NCBI GenBank assembly: GCA_002269645.1
Contig: NIVC01000246.1
Coordinates: 68,769 to 132,768 of the forward strand
Direction of reading: 5' to 3'
Length of the DNA stretch: 64,000 bases
DNA from: Macrostomum lignano
Lineage: Eukaryota
This document shows positions 5,790 to 64,000 of the stretch, one piece after another. Every line of letters begins with the position of its first letter. The first letter of the stretch is position 1. The notes beneath the pieces were generated by a model that saw nothing but the letters and a program-made list of their open reading frames with translations, made no database searches and was not told where the DNA came from. The position numbers and the translations under genes were made by a program.

Positions 5790-7728
5790 AGCAGCTCGCA
5801 GCAGTCAGAAGAGACCAGAAGCCACAGAGGCCGCAGAGACCGAAGCAGCACGTATCTTGCGATCGCTGCGGCAGGCCATGGCAACCCACGTGCACCGCAG
5901 CGCAGGGCAAGAGCTGCAGAAAGTGCGGGAAGCCTTTGAGCAGCTGAAGCGCAGCATCGCGGAGCCGACAACGCTGGCTTTTTACGACAAGCGGCTACAC
6001 ACGCAGCTGATCGTGGACGCGGGGCCGACCGGACTGGGCGCCATCCTGGCGCAGGTGCAGCGCGACGGCAACTCAAGGCCGGTTGCATACGCCAGCCGGA
6101 CCCTCTCCGATGTCGAGCGGCGATATTCGCAGACCGAGAAGGAGGCACTCACCATGAAGTTCGGCTGCCTGAAGTTTGAGTACTACCTGCATGGATCGCG
6201 CGAGTTCACAGTGGTCTCCGATCACAAGCCGCTGACGGCCATGTTCGCGCCTGGGTCGCGGCCGCCTCCACGAGTCGAGCGAATGGCGCTGAGGATCCAG
6301 CACCTAGTGTTCAAGGTCTAGTACCAGCCGGGAGCCTCCAATGCTGCAGATGTACTCAGCAGGCAGCCCCTAAGCGCACAAGGCAGAAGTTTTGGCGAGC
6401 AGCTGAGGGAGGCCTACATCAACGAGGTGGCGCAGGCGGCTGTGCCGATGGCGCTGACGCTCCAGGACATCCGCAAGAGCTCTGCCAGCGACCCAGTCAT
6501 CCGGGCAGCGATAGCGGCGAAGCAAGGCGGCCGCTGGGATCGCTCCAACCCCGAGATACGCTCGCTCCACGCGCTGCGAGAGGAGCTGTCTGCGGTTGAC
6601 GGGGTCCTCCTTCGGCACCACCGAATCGTCGTGCCAGCTGATCTGCTGCAGCAGATGCTCGAATTAGCGCATGAAGGGCACCATGCAGTGCTCGCAGAAG
6701 ACGATCGCCAGACTCTGCACGAAGGTCTGGTGGCCGAGGATGGCAACTCAAGCGGAGGAATTCGTCAGTCGATGTCGCAGCTGCGCCGTCACGTCGCACA
6801 CGCCAGCCGTCCGGGCCACGCCTCTGCAGCCGGCGCCGATCCCCGCAGGCGCCTGGCTGTCGATCGGCGCCGATTTCGTGGGACCCATCAGCAACAACAT
6901 GCTGCTGGTGTGCGTGGACCGCTACTCAAGGTTTCCGGAGGTGCAGCTCACGCAGGCGACGACGGCCGAGGCACTGTTCGCCCGCTTCGGATCCCGCAGG
7001 AGCTCTTGAAAGATAATGAACCGCCCTTCTCGTCCAAGGAGTTCGGCCGGTTCCTGGCGAGCTACGGGATCAAGCACCGCCTCATCACGCCCTACTACCC
7101 AGCGGCCAACGGCATGACAGAGCGACTGAACCGCTCCATCAACAAAGTCGTGCGAGCAGCCATCGAGGAGCGGCGGGACTGGAGGACCGCTCTGGACGAG
7201 TGGCTGCTGGCCTACAGGAACACGCCGCACACGGCCACCGGGCGCGCACCAGCCGAGCTGCTGATGGGCCGGCGGCTAAACGACGTCATCCCCGCCGCCC
7301 GGCCATCCCAGCGAGTCCGCATCAACGAGCAGCGGCTGAGAGACGCCGACGCCGGCGCCAAGGCGGCGATGAAGCAGCACGCTGACGCAAGGAGGCGACC
7401 ACGGCGGCACGACGTCCAGGTCGGCGACTCGGTGCTACGACGGCGGGTCAGTGCCAGCAAGACGCAGACGCCATTCGAGAGCGGTGCCTGGACGGTCCAG
7501 CGGGTGGCCGGCAACTCGCTGCTGCTACGCCGGGACGGCACGACCTGCTGGCGGCACTGCACGGCGGTCAAAGTCGTCAGCCCCGACTTGGCCGACGCCG
7601 GCGTCCATACGCAGAACGCTACACCGAGAGCTGCTGGCGAGGCGGCCCGAGATCCACCCGCCTCCCCGGTGGCGCTGCGCCCGCACCCCCGCGCTGCTCG
7701 GGCTGGCGTGAAAATCTACAAGGACTGA
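5790..7728 (+). mobile_element. Decayed Ty3/Gypsy LTR-retrotransposon pol fragment (RT connection, RNase H, integrase); no LTRs seen
   Basis: RNase H motifs LIVDAGPTGLGAIL, VAYASRTL, YSQTEKEAL, SDHKPL; in-frame TAG at 6319-6321 followed by YQPGASNAADVLSR; HHCC finger HEGH..KVWWP..CRSC; integrase ADF..KDN..TERLNRSI split by frameshifts. Confidence 0.92.
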
Positions 7729-14589: not shown

Positions 14590-17240
14590 TCATTACACAT
14601 ATTAAGACGCAGAGGGGAGGCCCCTCGCGCGCACGCGCTCGCAGAACAGGCGGGAGGGGCAGGCAGCAGCAGCCTGAGGGTTCAGCTCAAGCGCCTGCAA
14701 GTCAGCGATGAGGCAGTCCGTTAGAGTGACAGTGCGGGCCTGGCCGTGGCGCAATTGCTCGGTCGGCCGGTGCAGCATGGCCAGGGCCAGAGGGACCGGC
14801 GCACCGCGACCCAGGGTCCGTAGGCAGTGGCCCAGCAGCATCTGGCGGCGCCGGCGCAGGGTAGCGCTCAGGGGCGGCGTTCCGGCGTGGGCCATCAGAG
14901 CGTTGGTCGGCAGGCGCTCCGGGTAGTGCACGCCCAGCGCGTAGCGCAGCAGCGATCGGTAGAGCGCGTCCAAGGCCCGCTCTCGCTCCTCGGTCAGCGG
15001 CACAGCCTCCATGCCGTACAGAAGGCCGCGCGGAACAGGCGCACCTTCAGGTCGTCTCTGGCAGCTGAATGAAAAAGTTCCTGAGGAACTGCGCGGCGCG
15101 CCAGGCCTGGTTCCTCCTGTCGGAGACAATCGCCCAGCGAGCGTCCACCAGCAGCCCAACACGGGCACCCTCATTGCAAAGCCATGTGAGAGCGCGCTGG
15201 GCAGCAGCTGGATCGCGGCAGAGCAGCGCGATGTTGTCAGCAGACACAAGAGCGGGAAGCGAAACAGCAGGGTGTCTGGAGCTTCGGCGTGGGACCAGCA
15301 AGTAGCTGTCATCCTCGCGGAGGGACCGACGAAGCACGTAGTCCACAACTACGAGGAAGAGCAGAAGAGCCAGCGTGTCGCCATGAAGGACGCCTGAGCT
15401 GGTGCCGAACTCTTCTGTGGGGCCGTCGCTCGACATGACAAAGTCCTGGAGTCGCGGTAGAGGTCCATCACCGCGCTCAGCAGCGCAGCAGGTACGCCAG
15501 AGTGAGCTAGAAGCCACGCGATCGCAGGCCTGGACACCGAGTCAAACGCCTTGTGAAAGTCGGCGAAGATAATTGACACGGAGCGCTGGCGGGTCTTGCA
15601 GGCCTCGATGACACCTGTCCGAGATATACGGCCCTGTATATAGTGGAGATATAGTGGACCTGTCCGAGCGGAAGCCGCTTTGGAGGCTCAGCAGCAGCAG
15701 GAATTGAAGACCGGGCAGGAGGCGGTTGCTCAGAATCGCGTTCAGCAGCTTCGTCGTTGTGAATTCCAGCGCGATGCCTCGCTGGTTGTTCAGGCTGGTG
15801 GAGGCGCATTTTTTAGGGATGGAGACAATCTTGGAGGTGCGCGATTGCTGAGGAGCTGAGGCGGCCTCGTTGCCTCCAAGGCTGCAGTACTTGTTCAGCA
15901 GGTTGGTGATGATTTGGGTGAGCTCGGGCAGCTTTAGGACCCTGGGAGGGATGGTTCGCATGGTCCTCGATCAGTGCTTGGTCAACCTGGCCTGCAGTGA
16001 TGGGGCCGGTGTTGAAGGCGCCTGCTGGGCTGGAGCGAAGTCTGGGATTGGCAGAAGAGGCCAGTTGGAGCAGTTGGAGCGCGTTGAGCACCTCGCGGTA
16101 GTGGGTGGCCAGCAGGGCCTTGCGGTGCTCGGTGGAATCAGCGCCGACGATGGTGTTGGGCCTGGGCTTCTTGCCAGTCAGCTTGATGGCCCTTCAGACA
16201 GCACTATGGCGGCAGTTGTCAGTAGCGATTTGGATTTCGCTCACAGCCTCTTCGATGAAGGCTTCAGTCCGCTGGGCGTAGATGCGCTGCAGCTCGTCCC
16301 TGGCAGCACTGGCCTGGTCGCTGTCATGGCTGTGGAGTGCAGCAGTGCTCTGCACATGCCGCTTTGCCTGGGAGATCATGAGATCGCGGTCCCACAGGGC
16401 CTTTGGATGGTTTGCCTGTCTCCGTGGGAGAAGCGCTGCAGCATCCTCGACGACGTAATGGAAGACTCGAAGGACTTGGCTGGAGCAGGAGTAGCGCGGC
16501 AAGCATGCAGCTTGCGTGCGTGTCCAGGTTTCTCAGGTCGCCGGCCAGAGAGGGTGAGATGGCGCAGGCCGGAGCTTTTACCAGTGCAGATCAAATTCGC
16601 ATGCCACCAGGCGGGTGATCAGATTGAACGCAGTCGGGGCGGATGTTGACGACTCTGCGCACCCTGGACCTCAGGGCATTTGGGCAGAGAATCCAGTGAA
16701 AAATAAAAAAAGGTGAAAAGTGGAAAGGTGAATTGGCATTGGGGATGCCACAGCTGTTCTTAACTATGCAGGCGGCCGTCAGCTGGCAATGGTGAGTTGA
16801 AGTCACCAGCAACAACGACAGAGTTACGATTGCAGGGATGGAATCAAGCATGCAGCCCAGAGTGTCGTAAGGGCTTCTGTCTCAAATGGATCTTCGCAGG
16901 TCCGGGGCCGTTTGGAGCATATAGACGCAGATGATGTGAAGCCGCCTGTCTTTTTTGGCAAAGAAGGCGTGTCCGAGGCGCTCAGATGGGAACTTGATGT
17001 CCAGCAGCGCTCTGGGTGCGGTGGGCGATAGCAGGAAGCCGATCCTCCTGCAGTTCCCTTGGGAGTGGCTGCACTGGGGCAGCCTTGAATTGCCAGCTTA
17101 GACCCAGATCCACAGTCTGCCGCCGATGTTCTTGAACTGCCAGCAGGATGGAGATGTATAGTTCGCGGCCGCCAGCCTTGTCAACTCCTGCAGTCTCCAT
17201 GTCTGACTGAGAGTGCGCGGGCATTGAAGGCATGGCGCGA
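14590..17240 (-). mobile_element. Decayed non-LTR retrotransposon (APE endonuclease + RT; RTE-like)
   Basis: APE motifs VVVAGDFNS (about 16800) and SDH (about 16620); RT motifs IVSIPKK..RGIAL, QSGFRSDRST, FADFHKAFDSV, GVLHGDTLA; catalytic YADD decayed to SADN; C-terminal LYGMEAVPLT..RRRRQMLLGHCLR; many frameshifts. Confidence 0.88.
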
Positions 17241-18300: not shown

Positions 18301-21300
18301 ATGACCAGCTCTTTGACTGGAACCAAGAAAAGAGTTTGCTATTATTACGATGGTAAGTCTAAGTATGCTTGTAAGAAAGGGAATGTTATAAATTCTAATA
18401 ATACTAACATTAAACATATATTTCTATACATATAACATATCTGACTACTACATGTATGCCCAGCCCTAGGCCTGGTCATACTCAGACTCATAGCATAGGC
18501 CTACAAGTCTGAAGTGTATAGGATTTTTCAATGCAAGCAAAAGTATTGATTTTTCTTAGTGCACAAGACCTCATTGGAATAAATTCTAAAAATTGCCAAG
18601 CATATGCTGTGCTGAGAGTTCAGAAAAAAATTCCAAGGGTAGCCTAATTTTCCAAGGTTCTATTAGGCCTATATCATTACTTTTAGGCCTAAGTCTTGTA
18701 TGATATTTTTTACATATCTAGAATATTTAATAGAACCAAGTTGAGTTATTAAGAGCCATGAAAATTATATACATGCATGAACTTATAGTCATACATAGTA
18801 ATAGGAAAAAAAGTTTCTTAATGCTTAGCATATATAAAGCTAAAAAAATCTAACAAAAATAGTTCTGCCAAAGGTTTACTTATTATTGTTCTATAGTCTA
18901 TAAATACTTTGCTTTGTTGCTAGAAAAATATCACTAGCACTTAAGGCCTGCAAGTATTCCAGGGCTTCTATGCTAACATAAGCATTTCTTGCTGTTGCTA
19001 TTAAAATTTTATTTATTATTAAGAATTGGTACATGGTCCAATTGACATTGTGGCACAATTTAACTGTTTGGAGGGCATAGGCTAAAATAATAAAGCAGGG
19101 GAAGCTAAAGAATTATGCTATAAAGTTAGTTAGTGACAATGATAAAATTTAATTCCCTATTTGAAAATCAGTCAGAACTTTTGAAAAGCTTTGCTATGAA
19201 AATGTAAAACTAATAGAAGAGGAATATGCACATGTATATTTTATTACTGTTATAATCTATTATGTGAATATAAAGCCTACAAAACAATAATCACATAGAT
19301 GTATTGGTTTCCCGACAGACATTCAGACAGACATTCAGAAATCGTTCATTAAATGTTTAACAAAATTGTCTATTTATTACGCAAGATACTGTGAATTTAT
19401 AGAAACTTTTACGCATGTCTCTGCTTTAAAAAGACACCTCAGACACACACAAAGACGCTTCACAAGCTGAGATATTCCCTAACAACTGTTGTTACGACGT
19501 TTCCCAATATACCGAATACTGTATATAGTAGTTTTTTGAGAAGCCGCTACATCGTCCCACTTTGGTCTTTCTGCATGAAATTTGCACAGCTGTTTTACGC
19601 ATGTCTCTGCTTTAAAAAGACACCTCAGACACACACAAAGACGCTTCACAAGCTGAGATATTCCCTAGCAACTGTTGTTATGACGTTTCCCAATATACCG
19701 AATACTGTATATAGTAGTTTTTTGAGAAGCCGCTACATCGTCCCACTTTGGTCTTTCTGCATGAAATTTGCACAGCTGTTTTACGCATGTCTCTGCTTTA
19801 AAAAGACACCTCAGACACACACAAAGACGCTTCACAAGCTGAGATATTCCCTAACAACTGTTGTTACGACGTTTCCCAATATACCGAATACTGTATATAG
19901 TAGTTTTTTGAGAAGCCGCTACATCGTCCCACTTTGGTCTTTCTGCATGAAATTTGCACAGCTGTTTTACGCATGTCTCTGCTTTAAAAAGACACCTCAG
20001 ACACACACAAAGACGCTTCACAAGCTGAGATATTCCCTAGCAACTGTTGTTACGACGTTTCCCAATATACCGAATACTGTATATAGTAGTTTTTTGAGAA
20101 GCCGCTACATCGTCCCACTTTGGTCTTTCTGCATGAAATTTGCACAGCTGTTTTACGCATGTCTATGCTTTAAAAAGACACCTCAGACACACACAAAGAC
20201 GCTTCACAAGCTGAGATATTCCCTAGCAAATGTTTTTACGACATTTTGATGAGGACGCACTTTTTCCCAAATCCCGCGCTGGCACATGGGCTCTAAACTT
20301 ACTAGCCTACTGACAGCAGGCTAAGGGCATTTTTATTCTCTTTTATCTTTTATCGAGATAGCAAATTTGTCGAACGACTACCAGAATAAAGTAAGACCTG
20401 ACTCTCAAAATGGCAAAGAAAGTTTGCGACTAAATTATGACTGGAGAGTATCAGGTATCACTTTAAGAAATTGATCTGCCTACCGCAGAAGCAAATGAGT
20501 CTCAAACCGATTCGCAATTGACAACTCCGACAAGGGTAAGCGAAATCGCCCACCGAACAACTGCAGAACGTGCAAACGCCAAAGACAGGCGCCAAACGTC
20601 GGAAAAGTGATCACTTTGCTAAACAGTGCACATTAGTAAAATCGAACAGAATTAATGTTATCGACTCAGACGATGGGGTAATCCCGTCAGCAACTGAGAA
20701 TCAAACTACAGAAAATAAGCATCAAAACATTTCGTGCAACGAAACATAAAACACCCCATAAATATCACGTCAGACTTGATCCGCGATAACTGCATTGTCC
20801 CTTTCTTTATTCAACATCATCATTCAATAATACTGCTAGTAGTCTAAGACTCCAATTCAATCTGAAGTGTGAAGTGAACTAAGGAGAAGGTTAAATCTAA
20901 CAGTTATCTTTGTCGGTATTATTTCTTTGTTCGCCGATGGCTCAGATGAGTAGCTAAGCTAGTAGGCACTTATCAAGAAACAAATTGCGGCCAAATAAGC
21001 AGGTCAGAACGCCACATGAAAACGTATCTTTTTGCTGGGTGCACATTCTTACTACACTTCTAAACTTTCTACCACTAAGGTGCTCCATCTGCTCAGGGAG
21101 AAACGTAGAAGCAGCTGAAGAAGCAAGGAGCTCACTAAAATTAGAAAATGGCACGTAAGTTCAGTTAATATGCCTTGCAAATTTCAAAGCCCCCCTTCTC
21201 GTGTACATTTTACCTACTTCAATTTGGCAGTATAGTTCAATGCCAGTTGCTTTCTTCTGTCACTCCGACGTATGGAGTCCAGATAGTGCACTGTGAGATC

Positions 21301-24300
21301 GTCGAAGAACACAGCCAAAAGCCAAAAATGGCTTTGCGTAAGCATCGGGACCAGAATTTTCTTCACTGTCTAAAATTTTTTATAATTAATTCTTCAATAG
21401 GCCTCTTGCGTAATGTACATGGCAAAATGACAACGAATGTACATAAAGAAAAACTGCCTCCTGTACAGTGTTAATATTGCTGATAGATCTGCCTAAAGTA
21501 AAGTGCTTCAGATCGGAAGAAGGCAAATACAAGTATAACGTACATTCCATGCCGGTGTCCAAATGCAAGTTAGATATGAGCATGCCTTCAGGCAACCGTT
21601 GCTAGGGAATATCTCAGCTTGTGAAGCGTCTTTGTGTGTGTCTGAGGTGTCTTTTTAAAGCAGAGACATGCGTAAAACAGCTGTGCAAATTTCATGCAGA
21701 AAGACCAAAGTGGGACGATGTAGCGGCTTCTCAAAAAACTACTATATACAGTATTCGGTATATTGGGAAACGTCGTAACAACAGTTGTTAGGGAATATCT
21801 CAGCTTGTGAAGCGTCTTTGTGTGTGTCTGAGGTGTCTTTTTAAAGCATAGACATGCGTAAAACAGCTGTGCAAATTTCATGCAGAAAGACCAAAGTGGG
21901 ACGATGTAGCGGCTTCTCAAAAAACTACTATATACAGTATTCGGTATATTGGGAAACGTCATAACAACAGTTGCTAGGGAATATCTCAGCTTGTGAAGCG
22001 TCTTTGTGTGTGTCTGAGGTGTCTTTTTAAAGCATAGACATGCGTAAAACAGCTGTGCAAATTTCATGCAGAAAGACCAAAGTGGGACGATGTAGCGGCT
22101 TCTCAAAAAACTACTATATACAGTATTCGGTATATTGGGAAACGTCGTAACAACAGTTGTTAGGGAATATCTCAGCTTGTGAAGCGTCTTTGTGTGTGTC
22201 TGAGGTGTCTTTTTAAAGCAGAGACATGCGTAAAAGTTTCTATAAATTCACAGTATCTTGCGTAATAAATAGACAATTTTGTTAAACATTTAATGAACGA
22301 TTTCTGAATGTCTGTCTGAATGTCTGTCGGGAAACCAATACATATCACATAGTATAAAATAATAGTTATTGAGTGTTTTTAGCATTCACAGTCACACTCA
22401 CAAAAGGCAAACCCTGTGTCAACCAATATGCTCTGATCTCTATAATTTTCCCCGACCCTAGTCACCCTATTAACCCCATTTGTATAAAGATTTAATATAG
22501 CATATAACAGCTTCCATTGACTTGCCCAGGCGACATCGGCAACTACTACTATGGCCAGGGCCACCCCATGAAGCCGCACCGCATCAGGATGACGCACAAC
22601 CTGCTGCTCAACTATGGCCTGTACCGCAAGATGGAGATCTACCGGCCGCACAAGGCCACAGCCGAAGAGATGACGCGTTTCCATAGCGACGACTACATCA
22701 AGTTCCTGCGCTCCATCCGGCCGGACAACATGCACGAGTTCAACAAGCAGATGCAGCGTTTCAACGTCGGCGAGGACTGCCCCGTGTTCGACGGCCTGTA
22801 CGAGTTCTGCCAGCTCAGCACGGGCGGCTCCATCGCCGGCGCCGTCAAGCTGAACAAGGGCGCCACCGACATTGCCATCAACTGGGGCGGCGGCCTTCAC
22901 CACGCCAAGAAGTCCGAGGCGTCCGGCTTCTGCTACGTCAACGACATCGTGCTGGCCATCCTGGAGCTGCTCAAGTACCACCAGCGGGTTCTGTACGTCG
23001 ACATCGACATCCACCACGGAGACGGCGTCGAGGAGGCCTTCTACACCACCGACCGCGTCATGACCGTCTCGTTTCACAAGTACGGCGAGTACTTTCCCGG
23101 CACCGGCGACCTCAAGGACATCGGGGCCGGCCGGGGCAAGCACTACGCTGTGAACTTTCCGCTGAGGGACGGCATTGACGATGAGGCATTTGAGCAGATC
23201 TTTGCCCCCGTCATCACCAAGGTCATGGAGCACTACAGGCCCTCCGCCACCGTTCTGCAGTGCGGTGCCGACTCTCTGGCTGGGGACCGCCTTGGCTGCT
23301 TCAACCTGTCGCTGAAGGGCCACGGCCGCTGCGTCCAGTTCATGAAGAAGTTCGACACCCCCCTGCTGTTGCTGGGTGGCGGCGGCTACACCATCAGGTG
23401 AGCTGGTTGCCTCATCTGGGATGCTGGGTGCCTCATCTGGGATGCTGGAGCCTCATCTGGGATGCTGGGGGGGGGCTTATCTAGGATTCTGGGTGCTTAT
23501 TTAGGATTCTGGGTGCTTCATCTGCTATTCTGCATCCTTAATCTGGGATTCTGGGTGTTTCATGAGGGTGCCTCATCTGGGAATCTGGAATGCTTCTTGA
23601 TGATTAATATGGGACGCTGGTTGCCGTGACCAGCTGATCCCAAAATTGCCCCCAATTCCTAGAAACGTCACCAGCTAATCCCAAAATCTTCCCCAATTCC
23701 TAGAAACGTGACCAGCTGATTCCAAAATCTTCCCCAATTCCTAGAAACGTGACCAGCTGATCCCAAAATCCCTCCAATTCTTAGAAACGTCACCAGCTGA
23801 TCCCCAAATCGCCCCCAATTCCTAGAAACGTGACCAGCTGATCCCAAAATCCCTCCAATTCTTAGAAACGTGACTAGCTGATCCCCAAATCGCCCCCAAT
23901 TCCTAGAAACGTGACCAGCTGATTCCAAAATCTTCCCCAATTTCTAGAAACGTGACCAGCTGATCCCAAAATCGCCCCCAATTCCTAGAAACGTGACCAG
24001 CTGATCCCAAAATCGCCCCCAATTCCTAGAAACGTGACCAGCTGATCCCAAAATCATTCCCAATTCCTAGAAACGTGGCCCGCTGCTGGACCTACGAGAC
24101 GGCCATCGCCCTGGGCCAGGAGATTCCAAACGAGCTGCCCTACAATGACTACTTTGAGTACTTCGGGCCGGACTTCAAGCTGCACATTCAGCCGTCGAAC
24201 ATGTCCAACCAGAACACGCCCGAGTACCTGGAGAAGATCAAAACTCGGCTGCTGGAGAATCTGCGAATGCTGCCGAACTCGCCTGGGGTGCAGATGCAGG

Positions 24301-25645: not shown

Positions 25646-26144
25646 AGTCAGACACACACGGGCAAGAGGAAAGCTAAACTGTTTATCGGCCTGGCTCGTG
25701 GCTGGGACCTAGGGTGACCTTTTTCTCTCTTGCTCGCTATGCACACGCACTGGATTTGGTTTTTCAAGTTATTCTGCAATCTTCAGTACTAAGTACTTAA
25801 TTTCGAGCCCTGAGGCAGTCTGGAGTCGGTAAAACAGGATGAAGATGTTAATTTAATAGGTCTTCTACAGCGATTGCTGCAGTTTTAAGAACTTTAAAAA
25901 ATATTGTAAAATCTAACTAGTTACTTGTAGTTAAGTGTCCGTCTGGCTTTTTAAATGTCTAATGTATAATGCAATTCGTTGTTTTTAAATTATTTCTTCG
26001 TATTAGTTAAATAATAATCCTGCAGTGCAATGACTGCAACTTGCTAAACCAAAAACTGCACCAGTGTTTTTCTATCTTGTTTTAGTACTTTTAATCGGGG
26101 AAATCAGCCTTGATTTGCCTGGATAATATTAAATGATACCGAAT

Positions 26145-27700
26145 GACCTACTGAGGCTAGCTCTATGACCCACGGAGGATAGCTCTATTACCCACGGAGG
26201 ATAGCTCTATGACCCACGGAGGATAGCTCTATGACCCACGGAGGATAGCTCTATGACCCACGGGGGATAGCTCTATGACCTAATGAGGCTAGCTCTATGA
26301 CCCACGGAGGATAGCTCTATGACCTACGGAGGATAGCTCTATGACCCACGGAGGATAGCTCTATGACCCACGGAGGATAGCTCTATGACCCACGGAGGAT
26401 AGCTCTATGACCCACGGAGGATAGCTCTATGACCCACGGAGGATAGCTCTATGACCCACGGAAGATAGCTCTATGACCCACGGAGGATAGCTCTATGACC
26501 CACGGAAGATAGCTCTATGACCTACTGAGGCTAGCTCTATGACCCACGGAGGATAGCTCTATGACCCACGGAGGATAGCTCTATGACCCAAGGAAGATAG
26601 CTCTATGACCCACGGAGGATAGCTCTATGACCCACGGAGGATAGCTCTATGACCCACGGAGGATAGCTCTATGACCTACGGAGGATAGCTCTATGACCCA
26701 CGGAGGATAGCTCTATGACCCACGGAGGATAGCTCTATGACCTACGGAGGATAGCTCTATGACCTACGGAGGATAGCTCTATGACCCACGGAGGATAGCT
26801 CTATGACCCACGGAGGATAGCTCTATGACCCACGGAGGATAGCTCTATGACCCACGGAGGATAGCTCTATGACCCACGGAAGATAGCTCTATGACCCACG
26901 GAGGATAGCTCTATGACCCACGGAAGATAGCTCTATGACCTACTGAGGCTAGCTCTATGACCCACGGAGGATAGCTCTATGACCCACGGAGGATAGCTCT
27001 ATGACCCAAGGAAGATAGCTCTATGACCCACGGAGGATAGCTCTATGACCCACGGAGGATAGCTCTATGACCCACGGAGGATAGCTCTATGACCTACGGA
27101 GGATAGCTCTATGACCCACGGAGGATAGCTCTATGACCCACGGAGGATAGCTCTATGACCCACGGAGGATAGCTCTATGACCTACGGAGGATAGCTCTAT
27201 GACCCACGGAGGATAGCTCTATGACCCACGGAGGATAGCTCTATGACCCACGGAGGATAGCTCTATGACCCACGGAGGATAGCTCTATGACCCACGGAAG
27301 ATAGCTCTATGACCCACGGAGGATAGCTCTATGACCTACTGAGGCTAGCTCTATGACCCACGGAGGATAGCTCTATGACCCACGGAGGATAGCTCTATGA
27401 CCCACGGAAGATAGCTCTATGACCCACGGAGGATAGCTCTATGACCCACGGAGGATAGCTCTATGACCTACGGAGGATAGCTCTATGACCCACGGAGGAT
27501 AGCTCTATGACCCACGGAGGATAGCTCTAAGACCCACGGAGGATAGCTCTATGACCCACGGAGGATAGCTCTATGACCCACGGAGGATAGCTCTATGACC
27601 CACGGAGGATAGCTCTATGACCCACGGAGGATAGCTCTATGACCCACGGAGGATAGCTCTATGACCCACGGAGAATAGCTTTATGACCAACTGAGGATAG
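26145..27700. repeat. 22-bp minisatellite (CTCTATGACCCACGGAGGATAG), about 70 copies
   Basis: Tandem array with recurring variant units. Confidence 0.95.
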
Positions 27701-28211
27701 CAGAATGGACTGTGGACTGGGTGTCTGTTAGGCTATGGCTTTAATTGCAAGCTGTGACGCTTGGAAATCAGGCAGGTTGCGGCTCAGATGAAGCAGCAGT
27801 TTGTACTCCTGTTGGAACGGCAAATCTGTCACTCATCAGCAGGTACCTGGTCACCTACGTGGTTTTCTCTGTACATCGTGGTGAAAGTAACGGAGGGAAA
27901 AATGACACAGAATACTTTGAGTTATAGCAAATTTCCAAGTTTAAAAAATTTCCCGGGAAACTCAACAGTCAGTGTGTTGTATTGTACTTTATTCATCCGA
28001 TGCATAACATTTTCACGGTCAGTTGTTGAAATAACAAATATTACCGGGTGTATATACATTTACGCATATAAGATAAATAGAAAATTCTTTAAAGGAAAAC
28101 AAATGTATGGTCATATGCGAATATACTATAGCAGAAACTTATAAGCTTGGTCGAATAGTTCGGAATGCATCATGTTTAAACATGTGCAAATAAATAATTT
28201 GAGCTCTAGCG

Positions 28212-32939
<4,728 letters not shown>

Positions 32940-37038: not shown

Positions 37039-40000
37039 TCACAGCAGCGTGGTGAACACAAACGAAGCCGCAGATCCCGTTCCCAGTCCCAGGGTCAGAA
37101 AGAAGCTCATCAACGCGCCGTACAATTCGGCATTCTGAATCTCGGCTGCGGCGGCGCCTCGAGTCATGCTCAGAGCGCCCAGGTAACCGTTGCTAAGGCC
37201 GAACAGGCTGACAAGGATGGGCAGAGCGGCGTCAGAAGTGAACGCTGGCGGGATCGCCCACTGCCGCCTGGGCTGGTAGTTGCAGGCCAGGAATAGGGGA
37301 ACAAAGACCAGCCTGAGCAGGGCCAGGCCGGCAAGCAGGCGATTTGAGCTGGGCAATGAGAAGCTGACAAAACACCTGCCCAGCAGGTCGGCAGCGTTGA
37401 ATGCCAGGAAGCAGGCCAGCGGGACAAAATAGAGCGAGTCAGGCCTGGCAACTGAGCTGACCGAGCTGAGCAGGGCCGGGTAGAGGCTGAGCGACACCGC
37501 GAACACCATGAATACGGACAGGGCCGGCCAGGCCAAGTCGGACAGCGCCCGGCGCCAGGTGGCCGGCTGGCCGGACAGTGACAGGCTGCTACCGGCAGAT
37601 GGCAGGCTGGAGTCGTAGGAGATGCCTGCGGTGCAATGTGGGTTTGGAGACATTCTTAAGCATTCTTGAAGACATTCTCCTCATCCATTGAGAGAATGGC
37701 AGTGACCCAGCTTTATGATCTGGTGTTGGCGGCCTAGCAACTGAGGATCCTGGGGTGTTGGCCTAGCAACTGAGGATCTCGGGGGGTGTTGGCCTAGCAA
37801 CTGAGGATCTTGGTGGGTGTCGGCCTAGCAACTGAGGATCTTGGCGGGTGTCAGCCTAGCAACTGAGGATCTTGGCGGGTGTCAGCCTAGCAACTGAGGA
37901 TCTTGGCGGGTGTCGGCCTAGCAACTGAGGATCTTGGCAGGTGTCGCCCTAGCAACTGAGAATCTGGGGGTGTCGGCCTAGCAACTGAGGATCTTGGCAG
38001 GTGTTGGCCTAGCAACTGAGGATCTTGGCGAGTGTCGGCCTAGCAACTGAGGATCTTGGCGAGTGTCGGCCTAGCAACTGAGGATCCGGGGGTGTCGGCC
38101 TAGCAACTGAGGATCCGGGGGTGTTGGCCTAGCAACTGAGGATCTTGGCGAGTGTCGGCCTAGCAACTGAGGATCCGGGGGTATCGGCCTAGCAACTGAG
38201 GATCCGGGGGTGTTGGCCTAGCAACTGAGGATCCGGGGAGGGTGTCAGCCTAGCAGATAGGGATCCGGGAGGGCGACAGCGACCCAGAGTGAGGATCTGG
38301 AACTGAATCATTTACGCAGTAGTAGTGCCGAGTGCATAAACCACAATAATGCATGTTAGCCAACAAAAACTCGATAAGATTAGATTTTCACGAGGCCCTG
38401 GGCCGCGACAATATTAGAAGAATGCAACAGTGGTGAGCAGTTAGCAAACGATTTGTTATCGCTACTGAAAAACAACGTTGAAATTTGAAAATCTGAAACA
38501 AATGTTAAACTAGCAGTCAGCAATTACGTGTCGGCCTGGTTGCCCTGATGGTCCTGAGCCGAATTGGTCTATCTGTATAAGACAAATAATAAGCGAACAG
38601 ATTTACTAAACATTTCAGAATGCGAGTATATACTCGTAGATAGCTTTCTATGGCTGGTGAATGGTGAGAACGATTTTGATATCGATAAAAACAATTAGGA
38701 TCGAGCTTTGTACTCATTGACGCACTCACTTTGCGATCTGTTCACCTGCTCTCGAACGAATGGCAGCCTACGCAGCGCCAGGTAGGCCAGCAGGCACAGT
38801 AGAAGTACGCAGGTGGCTGATACAAAGTACACGAGGCCCGCTGATAGAGCGCCAGAGCCAAGGCTTAGGCTGGCTATGTACACCAGGGCGGCTGTGACAC
38901 CACCGCTGGCCTGGCCCTGCGGGTGGTTTGTAGGGTGACCTGAGTGGGGGGGGACACTGGAGTGTCAGTGGGGGCACTGGAGTGTCAGTAGGGACACTGG
39001 AGTGTCAGTGGGGGGGCACTGGAGTGTCACTGGGGGACACTGGAGTGTCAGTGGGGACACTGGAGTGTCAGTGGGGACACTGGAGTGTCAGTGGGGACAC
39101 TGGAGTGTCAGTGGGGACACTGGAGTGTCAGTGGGGGCACTGGAGTGTCAGTGGGGGACACTGGAGTGTCAGTGGGGGACACTGGAGTGTCAGTGGGGGA
39201 AACAGGAGTGTCAGTGGGGCACACTAGAGTGTCAGTGGGGGGCACTGGAGTGTCAGCTCACCTGCATCAGCGCGGTAACATATTTATGAGTAAACATGGC
39301 AGCCAGACCGAATAGCGAGCCCTGCACGAGGGCGGCTCCGATGTTTACTGCCATCACGGAGGCCATGGTGCACCAGAAGAAAGCGGTTTGGTCTGTGGGC
39401 AGCAAAAGATTAAAATGGGAAATCAAACAATGATGAATGATGACCTCTCATTTATAAAGAGAACTTCATGGTTTAACCATATACCGGTGTTTGTAGATAC
39501 TAACAGGAAACCGAAATTTGAGCGATTTTAAAGTGACTCATAGCGTTTTAAAGTCACTAATACTGCGAAGCTACTACTACTACTTGCTACTACTACTACT
39601 GCTGCTTGCTACTACTACATCTACTACTGCTACAACTACTGCTGCTACTACTACTATTACTAATAATAATAATACTAAAACCCAGCCTCACAGTCGTCGG
39701 TGTCAACACAGACGAACGCAGCGGTGGCGGCAAACACGGCAATCATCAAACAGAGGCCGGCCAGCAGGCGGGTGGCCTGCCCAATCCGCTTGGTAACAGC
39801 AGCGTTGGCCAGGGTGAAGACTATATTAGGCAGATTTGAGAACACGGCCAAGTAGTTCTCAAATGTCAATTGCAGGTAAGTTGTACCGCCACCATCCTCG
39901 GTGCTATCGGCGCTGACATTTCTCAGCTTGAAGTTAAAGTAGCCTTTTGCGGTTGTGAAAAAATTCCAAGGCAGCAGCGAGCCGATGCCTAGGAAGAAGA

Positions 40001-40247
40001 ATAGAAACAGAGCGGCGTTGAATGAGTCCTGACTGCCGCGGCCGCCGCCAGCGCATCCGCTGTAGTACAGATGCACACTCTCGCTGCCGGCTCCATTCAG
40101 CAGCGGGGTGGTGACGCTGTTGTCACTCGCGTCTACATTGTTGTCAGTGTTGCCGATCGCCTCGTCTGAATCCAGCTGCTCGGAGTCGTCCACCTCGTCG
40201 CAGTTCACCGGCAGCGGCTGCTCGGGCTGATGACGGCGTTTCAGCAT
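37039..40247 (-). CDS. SLC29: Equilibrative nucleoside transporter (SLC29/ENT family), 4 exons, 486 aa
   Basis: Exons 40247-39692, 39392-39262, 38916-38730, 37625-37039 total 1461 nt with consistent phases. Motifs [57 protein letters not shown]. Confidence 0.92.
37725..38260. repeat. 29-31-bp repeat (GGCCTAGCAACTGAGGATCTTGGCGGGTGTC), about 17 copies
   Basis: Tandem array in ENT intron 3. Confidence 0.9.
38945..39256. repeat. 19-21-bp repeat (ACACTGGAGTGTCAGTGGGG)
   Basis: Occupies about 90% of ENT intron 2 (38917-39261), starting right after the donor GTGAG. Confidence 0.92.
39570..39675. repeat. Degenerate (CTA)n/(TAA)n microsatellite in ENT intron 1
   Basis: Trinucleotide run read directly. 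Confidence 0.8.
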
Positions 40248-47040: not shown

Positions 47041-50000
47041 ATGAATAGGCTAGGCCTAACTTTAGCCATTAACTTTTCTGTCAACAATCCTGTTTAGGGA
47101 CCTACTTTTTTGTCAATTATTCCATTCCAATTATTCTATTTACATTTCTATCAGTTATTCTATCAAATTATCCATTAACAATTCTATCAATTTTTGCATC
47201 AACTTTTCCATCAACTATTCTGTCAACTTTTGTATCAACTTTTCTATCAAATTTCAGCAATTGGTATTGTCAGCACTCATTATGGCACTGCAGACACTAT
47301 GTTTTGTTGCCCTAAAGCAAAATTATTAATTACCATAATGGTTCACATATCATAAAAATACTAATGATGCAGTTAAGTCATTTTCATAGACATAAACATG
47401 TGAATAGTATAAAGAATGATGGAAAAGTTGACACAAAAGTTGATAGAAAAGTTGACAGAAATGTTTCTTTCATTCATTTAACCATCAAATAAATGTCTAT
47501 CAAAAGCAAGTAATTTAGCAATTGAAATTTCTATTTCGAAATCAGTCACCTAGCCTACTCAGCTAACATGAACAAGTTACGTGCTTTGGTACAATGTGGT
47601 GAATCTAGAAAGACTCCCAATTACCAATTAGTGACTTATTAAGGCCTCGTCGTCTATGGTTCTAAGAATTATGTAATACAAATTTAACGGATGCACGCAA
47701 ATTCGGCGATAAACAAATTCGGCAACAGAAATTTAACACGGACAATTATTCGGCGAAAGCAAATACGGCGACAAGTATTTTTAAGTCTGATTTATCGATC
47801 GTAACCAAGGTAATCATTGCTTGCGAGCTTGTCTGACATCAGCCACCTGCGCCTCACTCAGTATTGAGGCTGGCGTCAGATAGTCTGAGTGGATGCGGGC
47901 GGTTAGCAATTGTTTCTTATCATTTTTGACAGGCCATCAGATTTTTTAGGTCAGTCCTATTGTTCGTGTTCACTCAAGCGTGTGACAACTTTGACAGCTA
48001 TGCTTTTTACCCCTAAAAGTACTTTGGGATTAGAGCTAGATTATCGATTTCTCTTCACCATCTTCACTTTCTACTTAATAAGATCTTTTTAATGTATATT
48101 TTTTCTTTAATTTTTGTAATTTCTACGTATGTCATGGTCATAAATCAAAATGTAGCGATTTTGAGTGATTATGACCGCACCTGGCGTATTTTTATGGCCC
48201 CGAGGAAACTGATAGGATCTTTTGGTAACGTGAGTTTGGGTGGCAACAAGCGCAGCCAATCAGAAAATTCGATGTCAGTTTATAACAAATCGGCTCAGCC
48301 AATCAGTGTCGAGGTGTTAGATTTTATCAATTAAATTGCGGTCCAGTTGGCGGCTATATAAACCGATGTTTTTGGCCCGCTCGGACTCAACCGCGGACAA
48401 ACGCGGACAAACCTCTGGCTCGGCGGACCTTGGCCTAACCGGGCACCGCCCTTACCTCGTTCTAACCGACACCTGACCGTCGTCCCTTGATCCCCGGATT
48501 GCAACACCCCCTTCATCATCAAGGGCGAATCCCCCGGTCAGCTGCATCAATCATCGAGGTAAAGATCATCACCTGCTAGCTATCAGTAAAGACTATGACA
48601 TCATCATCCCGGGCCTACAGCTGCGAAGCACTAAGCCGATTCGGTCACTGTGGATTACCTGGCCTCCGGCTGTCGAGTTTCCGATTGTTGGGTGAGAGGC
48701 TACCTAGAATTGCTTGATTGGGTGATTCCTTGTCTGTCCCCTATTTCAGTAGCTGGATTAGGCGCACATTTTTGTTCATTTTGTTCAGTAGTGCTGTTAC
48801 TGAGGCAGAAATCAGTCAATAATACTGATAGTAGTCTGATTACTCCATTTCAATCTGAAAGTGAAGTTATTTAGTGAGAAGGTTAAATCTGACAGTTATA
48901 TTTATCGGTATTATTTCTTTGTTCGCCGATGGCTCAGATGAGTATAGCTAAGCTAGTAGGCGCCGGCACAGTGAACCAATGGCGAGGCAGTTCTATCAAA
49001 TCAGTTAGCGAACTTGCCAATAGTGCAAAATCGGCGCCAGAGATGTGCTCCCGTGCACTCTAGGTTCGCCAAGCGGCTCGGGTGGTGAATCATGCGGTCT
49101 CTGGGTTCGGGTTAGTCTATCATCAGCGCTACGAGAGGCTGGTTGGCGCGTTGAAGGCCAAAAGTACATACCCTCTTATTTAGCAATGTAATAGTACATG
49201 TAGCTACCCCATAGTCTCGCCACTGCAAGAATCCCCTGCACAAGTTCTCTCTGTACCTGCATGGCCAATGCGATCTAGTCCCATCAGTGTCCCTTATGAT
49301 CGGCTATGACTTCGAGATTGACAGCAAAAAGACACTAAGTTGGCAGGTAAGTGCTGAAGCCCCTTCTAGTCGAAAGCCTGATTTCGAAAGTTCCGGTTTG
49401 GTAAGCCAGAACGCACGGGCTGGTGGTAGTGGGTTAGTTAATCCGCTGATTAGCTGATCTCTACCTTCAAAATTCTCCTTGCTTGTCTCTCGCTGTCCCT
49501 CTCTTAGCTATAGGACCTACCGAAATTCGAATTTGCCAACAAAGCAATTTTTATAGAGGCCATGCCCCCTCTTAACTATAGGTATTATTGCATTCGTAAA
49601 TAAACAAAAGTACATTGGCTACTTTTAAGAGTTCGATATTTTCAAGGCTCAAGCTAATGTACATTTGTAGCATATCAGCAGCGAAATTTTGATAGATATA
49701 CCATGACAAATGCCTGCACATGTTGCAGAGTTACGCAGTAATTGCATGTTCGTACATGTACATGTGCATCTATTAGGAAATCCTTTCAAATCGAGAAACA
49801 CTGGATTTCGTCGTAGCGTTTGGTTCAAAAGAAACGATTTCTACTCGGACAAATATTTATACTGTGGACTACAGGTAGTTTAAAAGAACCATTACTCGAT
49901 GAATTTTTGATGTAGTAGGCACGTACGCCCTGGGCCTCCCCACTAACTTTTGCGCACCCTCGTTTCCCTCCTTTGTGATACTTGGGCCCCGTAATGACTC

Positions 50001-51625: not shown

Positions 51626-51744
51626 GTGGGTGGAAAACCAAAGAGGCTTCCAACGAATTGTTTTGCTTGTAAAATTCTATGAAATGGAAATAAATATTTC
51701 CATAAATATTTTCACAAATTTCATTATTAACAAAGCATGTGCCT

Positions 51745-63700: not shown

Positions 63701-64000
63701 TCACAACCATATCCTTAGAAGCCATCACAACCACGTCCTTAGAAGCCATCACAACCATATCCTTAGAAGCCATCACAACCATATCCTAAAGCCATCACAA
63801 CAATCTTAGAGCATCACAACCATATCTTAGAAGCCATCACAACCACATCCCTTAGAAGCCATCACAACCATATCCCTTATAAGCCATCACAACCACATCC
63901 GAGACCGGTCACAACCACATCCGTAGAAGCCATCAACAACCACATTCTATCCAAAGCCATCACAACCACATCCGTAGAAGCCATAACACCAATCCTTAGA
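51745..64000. repeat. 24/25-bp satellite (ATATCCTTAGAAGCCATCACAACC), roughly 500 copies, running past the window end
   Basis: Continuous array; C/T and CC/CCC variants; explains all MVVMASKD ORFs. Confidence 0.98.

What the first reader, a model, noticed from the sequence alone, without database searches (positions are those of the whole stretch)
19299..22343. Foldback Mutator-like element with 186-bp tandem TIR arrays and two convergent cargo genes, inside HDAC1/2 intron 1
Seen: exact 9-bp TSD (ATCACATAG), identical about 112-bp outer TIRs, inverted arrays of a 186-bp unit (about 4.5 vs 3.4 copies), and a 1.35-kb core with spliced ORF pieces on both strands pointing toward each other. Established: 9-bp TSDs and long TIRs typify MULEs, and MuDR has two convergent genes. 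Inference: this is a fairly recent deletion derivative of a possibly undescribed foldback MULE family. The arms could pair into a stem of about 750 bp in HDAC pre-mRNA, and the unit length is close to a nucleosome repeat length.
Basis: partly seen in the sequence, partly recalled or inferred. Interest (0 to 1): 0.8.

Follow-up and report, generated by a model that had tools for sequence, protein, structure and literature searches.

The report
Foldback transposon in flatworm HDAC intron
A 3-kb non-autonomous "foldback" DNA transposon, with long inverted arms built from 186-bp repeats and a decayed protease gene in the middle, sits harmlessly in the first intron of a histone deacetylase gene of the flatworm Macrostomum lignano. 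It is a new example of a known kind of mobile element.

Summary
The structure is real. An exact 9-bp direct repeat flanks a 3045-bp element (19299-22343). Each arm has a 108-bp outer segment plus 186-bp repeats (4.5 and 3.5 copies). The arms pair over 751 nt with 3 mismatches, around a 1346-bp core. The element lies in intron 1 of an HDAC1/2 gene, and the organism is Macrostomum lignano.

A second copy of the locus in public assembly GCA_002269645.1 has the same insertion at the same junctions. It differs in three ways: 6.5 and 7.5 repeat units, a 5.9-kb LINE nested in the core, and a mirrored substitution in both arms. So the arrays change in length, and the arms homogenise against each other. 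Arm identity therefore does not date the insertion.

The "two convergent cargo genes" are not supported. The minus strand holds a broken Ulp1 (Peptidase_C48) domain that keeps its His, Asp, Gln and Cys catalytic residues. The plus strand shows nothing recognisable. No transposase is present.

The 9-bp duplication, the foldback arms with subterminal repeats and the Ulp1 remnant fit Mutator-like elements of the Rehavkus/Phantom/FB type. The superfamily stays unproven, because no other copy or autonomous relative could be searched for.

Verdict: an ordinary, well-preserved new member of a known kind.

The parts
19290..19298 (.). Left target-site duplication ATCACATAG
   Evidence: Identical to 22344-22352. 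The same left flank is present in L001.
19299..19406 (+). Left outer, non-repeated TIR segment (108 bp). It begins 5'-ATGTATTGGTTTCCC and contains a 12-bp GACAGACATTCA x2.2 repeat at 19314-19339.
   Evidence: Exact reverse complement of 22236-22343.
19407..20246 (+). Left subterminal array, 4.5 copies of a 186-bp unit
   Evidence: TRF score 1631, 98% matches. Unit variants are listed. L001 has 6.5 copies here.
20247..21592 (.). Unique core (1346 bp) with no transposase
   Evidence: A six-frame Pfam scan finds only Peptidase_C48 on the minus strand. The core differs from L001 at 2 positions, 20876 and 20918.
20957..21595 (-). Decayed Ulp1/SENP-type cysteine protease domain (Peptidase_C48). It is split over two reading frames with in-frame stops (pieces 21217-21369 and 20957-21160). 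It abuts the inner edge of the right arm.
   Evidence: Pfam PF02902 E=9.7e-7, 29.3 bits against a cut-off of 20.7. The only PDB hit is yeast Ulp1 1EUV, with the catalytic His (SHF), Asp (LDS), Gln (QQ) and Cys (SCG) aligned.
20819..20968 (.). 150-bp segment of the core that also occurs at 48811-48961 (88% identity)
   Evidence: It shows that at least this module is dispersed in the genome.
21140..21152 (.). Site ATTAGAAAATGGC, which is duplicated around a 5.9-kb LINE in the other copy of the locus (L001). The window holds the pre-insertion state.
   Evidence: EN, RT and RNase H domains.
21593..22235 (-). Right subterminal array, 3.5 copies of the 186-bp unit, inverted
   Evidence: TRF score 1244. 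L001 has 7.5 copies. Unit variants mirror the left arm.
22236..22343 (-). Right outer TIR segment (108 bp)
22344..22352 (.). Right target-site duplication ATCACATAG (GTCACATAG in L001)
18301..18352 (+). HDAC1/2 exon 1 ([18 protein letters not shown]), donor G|GTAAGT
18353..22529 (+). HDAC1/2 intron 1 (4177 nt, phase 1). The element plus one TSD makes up 73% of it, and the element's right end lies 186 nt upstream of the acceptor.
22530..23398 (+). HDAC1/2 exon 2, 100% identical to M. lignano A0A1I8HLF6

Best explanation
This is a non-autonomous, foldback-type cut-and-paste DNA transposon in Macrostomum lignano. It inserted into intron 1 of an HDAC1/2 gene and duplicated 9 bp of target.

Shown:
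- Each end has a 108-bp terminal segment followed by an array of 186-bp units.
- The middle retains only a decayed Ulp1-type (C48) protease domain. This domain is cut off at the inner edge of the right arm, as expected if an internal deletion removed the rest of the element's gene.
- The arrays change length between copies of the locus: 4.5/3.5 units against 6.5/7.5.
- The two arms are kept alike by arm-to-arm conversion.
- Annotated mRNAs splice the element out with the intron.

Inferred:
- It most likely belongs to the Mutator-like superfamily (Rehavkus/Phantom/FB-type foldback MULEs).
- In pre-mRNA the arms would fold into a duplex of about 750 bp. No function is implied by this.
For: Transposon anatomy:
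- Exact 9-bp TSD, with TIRs that end exactly at the TSD.
- 751-nt arms with 3 mismatches.
- 186-bp arrays in both arms.
- Patterns far beyond chance.

Reality of the structure and its dynamics:
- The same insertion, with the same junctions, is in NIVC01001554.1. That copy has different unit numbers and a nested LINE with a 13-bp TSD.
- Outer-TIR position 51 is T in both window arms and G in both L001 arms. Unit variants 76A and 89T are mirrored between the window arms and absent from L001.

Coding content:
- Peptidase_C48 remnant with the catalytic H, D, Q and C residues aligned.
- No transposase in any frame.

Fit to Mutator-like foldback elements (literature):
- 9-bp TSD with FB-like composite TIRs in Tm1, which has a Phantom MULE transposase (PMC3169594).
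- Ulp1 domains occur in Mutator transposases of hydra, lancelet and plants (PMC2836005).
- Subterminal repeats raise transposase binding and excision in Muta1 (PMC5499845).

Tolerated in the host gene: the annotated 495- and 499-aa HDAC proteins join exon 1 to exon 2 across the element.
Against: - No transposase, and no second copy of the TIR or the 186-bp unit, could be found. There was nothing in the window, in about 125 kb of fetched loci, or in the metagenome, prokaryote and viral collections. The M. lignano genome itself could not be searched by DNA.
- The TSD length rests on one insertion event. In L001 the repeat is 8/9, so an 8-bp TSD cannot be strictly excluded.
- The terminal sequence 5'-ATGTATTGG does not resemble MULE termini I could compare with, such as Muta1 GGGTCTACCC.
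- Ulp1 domains also occur in Ginger1 (PMC2836005).
- The protein searches with the Ulp1 remnant and with the array ORF found no informative relatives.
Confidence: 0.6

Rival explanations
1. It is a foldback-type non-autonomous element of another superfamily that makes 8-9-bp duplications (Merlin, hAT, a P/Galileo-like family, Zisupton), not a MULE. Foldback architecture has arisen in several superfamilies.
For: FB-like structure is not evidence of common descent: Galileo is a P-superfamily element (PMC3169594 discussion; PMC3573991). Merlin makes 8-9-bp TSDs, has TIRs up to 462 bp, occurs in flatworms and can carry internal tandem repeats (PMC8101967). In L001 the perfect direct repeat is only 8 bp. 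No MULE domain was found.
Against: Merlin TIRs carry a conserved terminal 5'-GG, and this element starts 5'-AT. The TIRs end exactly at a 9-bp repeat in the window. Within the papers read, the Ulp1 association was reported for Mutator and Ginger1 only. Ginger1 makes 4-bp CCGG/CCGT duplications. Galileo-type elements make 7-bp TSDs (my recollection, not checked here).
Confidence: 0.27
2. The intronic inverted repeat has been co-opted. The 750-bp pre-mRNA hairpin would feed RNAi, piRNA or ADAR pathways and tune HDAC1/2 expression or splicing.
For: The MFE fold of the element as RNA pairs 748 arm-arm positions. The element is retained in both copies of the locus, and the arms stay near-identical.
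Against: Retention over about 0.15-1% divergence is expected for a neutral intronic insertion. Arm identity is explained by DNA-level conversion, as in other foldback elements (PMC12581902). Three paralogous HDAC loci have intron 1 at the same position without any related sequence. No expression, small-RNA or editing data were available.
Confidence: 0.05
3. It is not a transposon. It is an assembly artefact (a palindrome from missed long-read adapters) or a local inverted duplication.
For: M. lignano assemblies are long-read based and hard to assemble (PMC5730564). The arm unit numbers differ between the two records, which could partly reflect collapse.
Against: There is a unique, non-palindromic 1.35-kb core, and the TIRs end precisely at a 9-bp target duplication. 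The same junctions occur in a second, independently diverged record that also carries a LINE insertion with its own TSD inside the core.
Confidence: 0.03
4. It is a MuDR-like element with two functional convergent genes.
For: Short ORFs exist on both strands of the core.
Against: Only one domain is detectable, and it is broken by frame changes and stops. The plus-strand ORFs are at most 99 aa with no family match. No homologues exist in 5.8 billion proteins.
Confidence: 0.02

Closest known systems
Rehavkus elements (Mutator-related; Tribolium and other arthropods, annelids)
   Same: 9-bp TSD. [quoted passage not shown] The repeats evolve in concert and their number changes between copies (PMC6446971, PMC12581902).
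   Different: The Rehavkus transposase carries a PHD finger, and no transposase or PHD finger is present here. Rehavkus is reported from arthropods and annelids, not flatworms. There was no sequence similarity that could be tested.
Tm1 (Meloidogyne) and Drosophila FB: Phantom/Mutator foldback elements
   Same: Composite FB-like TIRs: a terminal motif plus tandem repeats of variable number. Mostly 9-bp TSDs. Many non-autonomous derivatives (PMC3169594).
   Different: Their repeat units are 13-15 bp (Tm1), against 186 bp here. The Tm1-A transposase has FLYWCH plus MULE domains, whereas the only coding remnant here is Ulp1.
Tetris (Drosophila virilis foldback element)
   Same: Non-autonomous foldback element whose TIRs contain long (about 220-bp) tandem repeats of satellite-like size (PMC4079207).
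   Different: The Tetris superfamily is unknown, and I did not compare its TSD or core. Tetris repeats have expanded into kb-scale satellite arrays, which could not be tested here.
Muta1 (Aedes aegypti MULE)
   Same: 8-9-bp TSD and a type-2 foldback TIR with subterminal repeats. The non-autonomous derivative has unequal repeat numbers at its two ends (3 and 7). This is the experimentally supported mechanism that I infer here (PMC5499845).
   Different: 12-bp repeats in a 145-bp TIR. The terminal palindrome is GGGTCTACCC. Muta1 is autonomous and encodes a DDE transposase.
Ulp1-carrying Mutator elements (hydra, lancelet; plant KI-MULEs) and Ginger1
   Same: A Peptidase_C48 domain encoded inside a DNA transposon (PMC2836005).
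   Different: Ginger1 makes 4-bp CCGG TSDs, so it is excluded here. For the Mutator examples, neither sequences nor TIR structures were available for comparison.

Membership tests
Foldback-type TIR element (structural class) | Long inverted arms made of an outer terminal domain plus subterminal tandem repeats, around a middle domain | tested here: met
   108-bp outer segments, 186-bp arrays of 4.5 and 3.5 copies, 1346-bp core.
Foldback-type TIR element (structural class) | Flanked by a target-site duplication, showing insertion by transposition | tested here: met
   ATCACATAG on both sides. The same junctions are in L001.
Mutator-like (MULE) superfamily, including Rehavkus/Phantom/FB | TSD of 9 bp (range 8-11) | tested here: met
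   9/9 in the window and 8/9 in L001. This rests on a single insertion event.
Mutator-like (MULE) superfamily, including Rehavkus/Phantom/FB | A MULE DDE transposase (PF10551 or relatives), encoded by the element or by an autonomous relative with the same termini | not testable with these tools
   This copy has none (six-frame Pfam scan), as expected for a non-autonomous derivative. No DNA search of the M. lignano genome was possible. The protein searches gave nothing.
Mutator-like (MULE) superfamily, including Rehavkus/Phantom/FB | Long TIRs (tens to hundreds of bp) | tested here: met
   751-nt arms at 99.6% identity.
Rehavkus | [quoted passage not shown] | tested here: met
   4.5/3.5 units in the window against 6.5/7.5 at the same locus in L001.
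Rehavkus | A transposase with a PHD finger | not testable with these tools
   No transposase is present in this copy.
MuDR-type organisation | Two convergent genes (mudrA and mudrB-like) | tested here: not met
   Only one broken domain, on the minus strand. The plus strand gave no family match.
Merlin | TIRs with a conserved terminal 5'-GG, and an 8-9-bp TSD | tested here: not met
   The termini are 5'-ATGTATTGG. The TSD length is compatible. The criterion comes from PMC8101967.
Ginger1 | A 4-bp CCGG/CCGT TSD, TGTNR termini and a Gypsy-like integrase (often with C-terminal Ulp1) | tested here: not met
   The TSD is 9 bp (ATCACATAG), the termini are ATGTA, and there is no rve domain. Only the Ulp1 feature is shared (PMC2836005).
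Ulp1/SENP cysteine protease (Peptidase_C48) domain | A match to PF02902 above the gathering score, with the catalytic His-Asp-Gln-Cys residues in order | tested here: met
   29.3 bits against a cut-off of 20.7. The H, D, Q and C residues align to yeast Ulp1 1EUV. The reading frame is interrupted, so it is a remnant and not an intact gene.

The most novel reading that the evidence does not exclude
This copy may be the first sign of an undescribed flatworm family of Ulp1-bearing, Mutator-related foldback transposons. Their 186-bp subterminal repeats would seed satellite-like arrays in the unusually tandem-repeat-rich M. lignano genome. At this locus, the resulting 750-bp intronic hairpin would make HDAC1/2 pre-mRNA a substrate for dsRNA pathways.
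Probability: 0.1. Interest if true: 0.5.

Novelty: new member of a known kind. Interest (0 to 1): 0.27.

Why it matters
The element is a clean, dated example of how foldback transposons behave. Two copies of one locus show three processes at once: array length change, arm-to-arm homogenisation (a mirrored substitution) and a nested LINE insertion. This warns against dating such elements from TIR identity. For M. lignano, a transgenesis and regeneration model whose genome is over half repeats and 15% simple and tandem repeats (PMC5730564), finding the family's autonomous partner would add an endogenous cut-and-paste system. It could also show one route by which tandem repeats spread. It has no evident consequence for HDAC function.

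Tried and rejected
1. Protein search (5.8 billion sequences) with the 202-aa Ulp1 concatenate found no hit at E<=0.01.

2. The same search with the 237-aa ORF that runs through the left array, meant to find other copies, found no hit. An open frame is unremarkable here because 186 is divisible by 3.

3. An exhaustive HMMER search of 1.84 billion representatives with the 68-aa Cys-motif piece gave a single hit, P0129. It is an ORF through a 683-bp tandem repeat in GCA_012552325.1, and it repeats a QQRDGFSCGVL motif six times. It has no Peptidase_C48 Pfam match and no nucleotide or tblastx similarity to the element. I rejected it as uninformative.

4. Exact-pattern scans for the terminal 22-mer (metagenome, prokaryotic genome and viral collections) and for a 33-mer of the unit (metagenomes) gave 0 hits. 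These collections are not expected to hold flatworm DNA.

5. Empty-site test in the three paralogous HDAC loci (L002-L004). Intron 1 is at the same position, but its sequence cannot be aligned, so no test was possible.

6. Exact look-up of a neighbouring single-exon ORF to find the source contig found nothing on record. The HDAC cluster members worked instead.

7. Search for shared motifs between the 108-bp outer segment and the 186-bp unit, as possible common transposase-binding sites. Only 7-mers were shared, and the best local score (19) lay within the shuffle range (mean 17, max 25). No evidence.

8. A CCHC zinc-knuckle-like or Cys-rich stretch around 20460-20640 gave no Pfam support on either strand.

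9. I first read L001's extra 5.9 kb as a possible full-length autonomous copy. I rejected this: it is a LINE (EN, RT, RNase H) with its own 13-bp TSD.


Full report
**Observation**

- The direct repeat ATCACATAG lies at 19290-19298 and 22344-22352. It brackets a 3045-bp element, 19299-22343.
It begins 5'-ATGTATTGGTTTCCC and contains a 12-bp motif repeated 2.2 times.
- Inside these lie arrays of a 186-bp unit: 4.5 copies at 19407-20246 and 3.5 copies, inverted, at 21593-22235. Both show 98% matches.
- In the outer register the arms are complementary over 751 nt with three mismatches.
- The core, 20247-21592, is 1346 bp.
- The terminal 32-mer and a 40-mer of the unit occur only here in the window. 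Shuffles gave zero expected matches.

**Host gene and organism**

A TBLASTN with a remembered human HDAC1 sequence mapped four exons. Exon 2 is 100% identical to Macrostomum lignano A0A1I8HLF6.
- Exon 1 is 18301-18352 ([18 protein letters not shown], donor G|GTAAGT).
- Intron 1 is 18353-22529 (4177 nt, phase 1).
- Exon 2 starts at 22530.
- The element makes up 73% of intron 1. Its right end is 186 nt upstream of the acceptor.
- The annotated 495- and 499-aa proteins join exon 1 to exon 2, so the element is spliced out with the intron.

**A second copy of the locus**

Cluster members of the HDAC protein led to four M. lignano loci in GCA_002269645.1.

L001 (NIVC01001554.1) is collinear with the window at roughly 99% identity. 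It carries the same element at the same junctions. The left flank is identical up to ...aataatcacatag|ATGTATTGG, and the right junction reads CCAATACAT|gtcacatag. The other three loci are paralogues whose intron 1 cannot be aligned, so they give no empty-site test.

L001 differs from the window in three informative ways.
1. Its arrays have 6.5 and 7.5 units instead of 4.5 and 3.5. The inner partial units are the same.
2. Its core carries a 5.9-kb non-LTR retrotransposon (endonuclease, RT, RNase H). A 13-bp duplication of ATTAGAAAATGGC flanks it. The window has that sequence once, at 21140-21152, which is the pre-insertion state.
3. Position 51 of the outer segment is T in both arms of the window and G in both arms of L001. 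Unit variants 76A and 89T sit in mirrored units of the two window arms and are absent from L001.

A change present in both arms of one copy but in neither arm of the other is the signature of arm-to-arm conversion. The core differs at only 2 of 1346 positions between the copies.

Three conclusions follow.
- The structure is not an assembly artefact.
- The insertion predates the split of these two locus copies.
- The near-identity of the arms cannot be used to date the insertion.

One caveat applies: part of the difference in unit number could reflect assembly collapse.

**Coding content**

Six-frame translation and Pfam scans of the core detect one domain only. It is Peptidase_C48 (Ulp1 catalytic domain) on the minus strand.
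- The joined pieces score E=9.7e-7 and 29.3 bits, against a gathering score of 20.7. A single frame scores E=0.008.
- The only PDB sequence hit is yeast Ulp1 (1EUV). The catalytic His (SHF), Asp (LDS), Gln (QQ) and Cys (SCG) are aligned in order.
- The domain is spread over two frames with in-frame stops. Its N-terminal part runs straight into the inner edge of the right arm.
- It is therefore a truncated, decayed remnant. This pattern is consistent with an internal deletion that removed the upstream part of the element's gene (inference).

The plus strand has short ORFs (at most 99 aa) with no family match. The 'two convergent cargo genes' reading, and with it the MuDR analogy, is not supported.

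Ulp1 domains in DNA transposons are normally part of the element's own proteins. They are reported in Mutator elements of hydra, lancelet and plants, and in Ginger1 (PMC2836005).

A 150-bp stretch of the core (20819-20968) recurs at 48811-48961 with 88% identity. At least that module is dispersed in the genome.

**Which superfamily**

Nothing in this copy encodes a transposase, and I could not search the M. lignano genome by DNA.
- Protein searches with the Ulp1 remnant and with the array ORF gave no informative relatives.
- Pattern scans of the metagenome, prokaryote and viral collections were empty.
- The assignment therefore rests on anatomy.

Features that fit Mutator-like foldback elements:
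- A 9-bp TSD with TIRs that end exactly at it.
- Very long TIRs built from a terminal domain plus subterminal tandem repeats whose number varies.
- A Ulp1 remnant.

Comparable known elements:
- Tm1 and FB (Phantom clade): 9-bp TSD and composite TIRs (PMC3169594).
- Muta1: 8-9-bp TSD and unequal repeat numbers at the two ends of a natural non-autonomous copy (PMC5499845).

Alternatives:
- Ginger1 is excluded by its 4-bp CCGG duplication.
- Merlin is disfavoured because its TIRs start with a conserved GG (PMC8101967), and this element starts with AT.
- Foldback architecture is known to be polyphyletic: Galileo is a P-superfamily element.
- The TSD length rests on a single event, which is 8/9 in L001.

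I put about 0.6 on a Mutator-like origin. I put about 0.9 on the broader statement that this is a non-autonomous foldback DNA transposon.

**Mechanism**

The anatomy, the target duplication, array turnover, arm homogenisation and removal by splicing are shown directly.

The mode of movement is inferred from Muta1. There, the transposase binds the terminal motif, additional subterminal repeats strengthen binding, and they raise excision frequency (PMC5499845). This element would be mobilised only in trans by a family transposase, if one still exists.

I looked for motifs shared between the outer segment and the 186-bp unit. None exceeded chance.

Folded as RNA, the element forms 748 arm-arm pairs in the outer register, with an MFE of -1769 kcal/mol. 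Whether it is edited or diced is untested. The idea that 186 bp reflects nucleosome spacing is speculation I could not address.

**Novelty**

Literature searches found no description of foldback or Mutator elements in Macrostomum. Repbase and Dfam could not be queried. The element is best called a new member of a known kind. The most instructive part is the two-copy comparison, which catches array length change, arm conversion and a nested LINE insertion at one locus.

Noticed in passing
window 52159-64000 (runs off the window end): A 24-bp satellite (CACAACCATATCCTTAGAAGCCAT), about 490 copies at 94% matches, with extreme strand asymmetry (GC skew about -0.6). Variant 35- and 45-bp periodicities occur at its left edge, 51740-52192.
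   Followed up: no
L001 13162-19066 (equivalent to window 21140-21152): A presence/absence polymorphism of a 5.9-kb LINE between the two copies of the locus. The LINE has an ORF1 of 520 aa plus APE endonuclease, RT and RNase H domains, with long open ORFs. It has a 13-bp TSD, ATTAGAAAATGGC. This points to a recently active non-LTR retrotransposon in M. lignano.
   Followed up: partly
window 47177-47466: A second, small foldback-like structure. Arrays of a 12-bp motif (CAACTTTTCTAT-like) lie in inverted orientation about 170 bp apart, which recalls the Muta1-type 12-bp subterminal repeats. The ends and any TSD are not evident.
   Followed up: partly
window 48811-48961: A 150-bp segment 88% identical to core positions 20819-20968 of the element. 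It is isolated in otherwise unrelated sequence. It could be a fragment of a related element or an independent short dispersed repeat.
   Followed up: partly
L005 9637-13732 (GCA_012552325.1, JAACNO010001672.1; organism not identified): Six tandem 683-bp units are annotated as one 825-aa protein. Each unit encodes QQRDGFSCGVL, which resembles a Ulp1 catalytic-Cys motif. This may be a protease-gene fragment amplified as a tandem repeat.
   Followed up: partly
window, whole length: Very high density of minisatellites: 43 TRF rows with score >=200, with periods of 11-186 bp. Many lie inside introns and between genes, for example 26143-27701 (22 bp x 71) and 23625-24085 (41 bp x 11, in HDAC intron 2). 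An (AGT)85 tract lies at 31330-31585. This agrees with the published 15% simple and tandem repeat content of M. lignano.
   Followed up: no
window 5857-7728 (+) and 14602-16649: An LTR-retrotransposon fragment with RT-RNase H and integrase domains (Pfam). Also RT-like ORFs by eye at 14602-15961 with no Pfam hit. The window has about 2 kb between 15717 and 17999 that L001 lacks, which is another structural difference between the two locus copies.
   Followed up: partly
window 37042-40247 (-): An equilibrative nucleoside transporter gene (PF01733, E=6e-36 for the 3' exon) lies downstream of the HDAC gene. It has minisatellites in and around its introns.
   Followed up: no
L002, L003, L004: There are three further M. 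lignano HDAC1/2 loci (Mlig018496 g1-g3) with different neighbours (PDZ and RRM genes). Intron 1 is at the same position but is 1.6-2.8 kb long and cannot be aligned. This is consistent with the known duplication-rich genome.
   Followed up: partly
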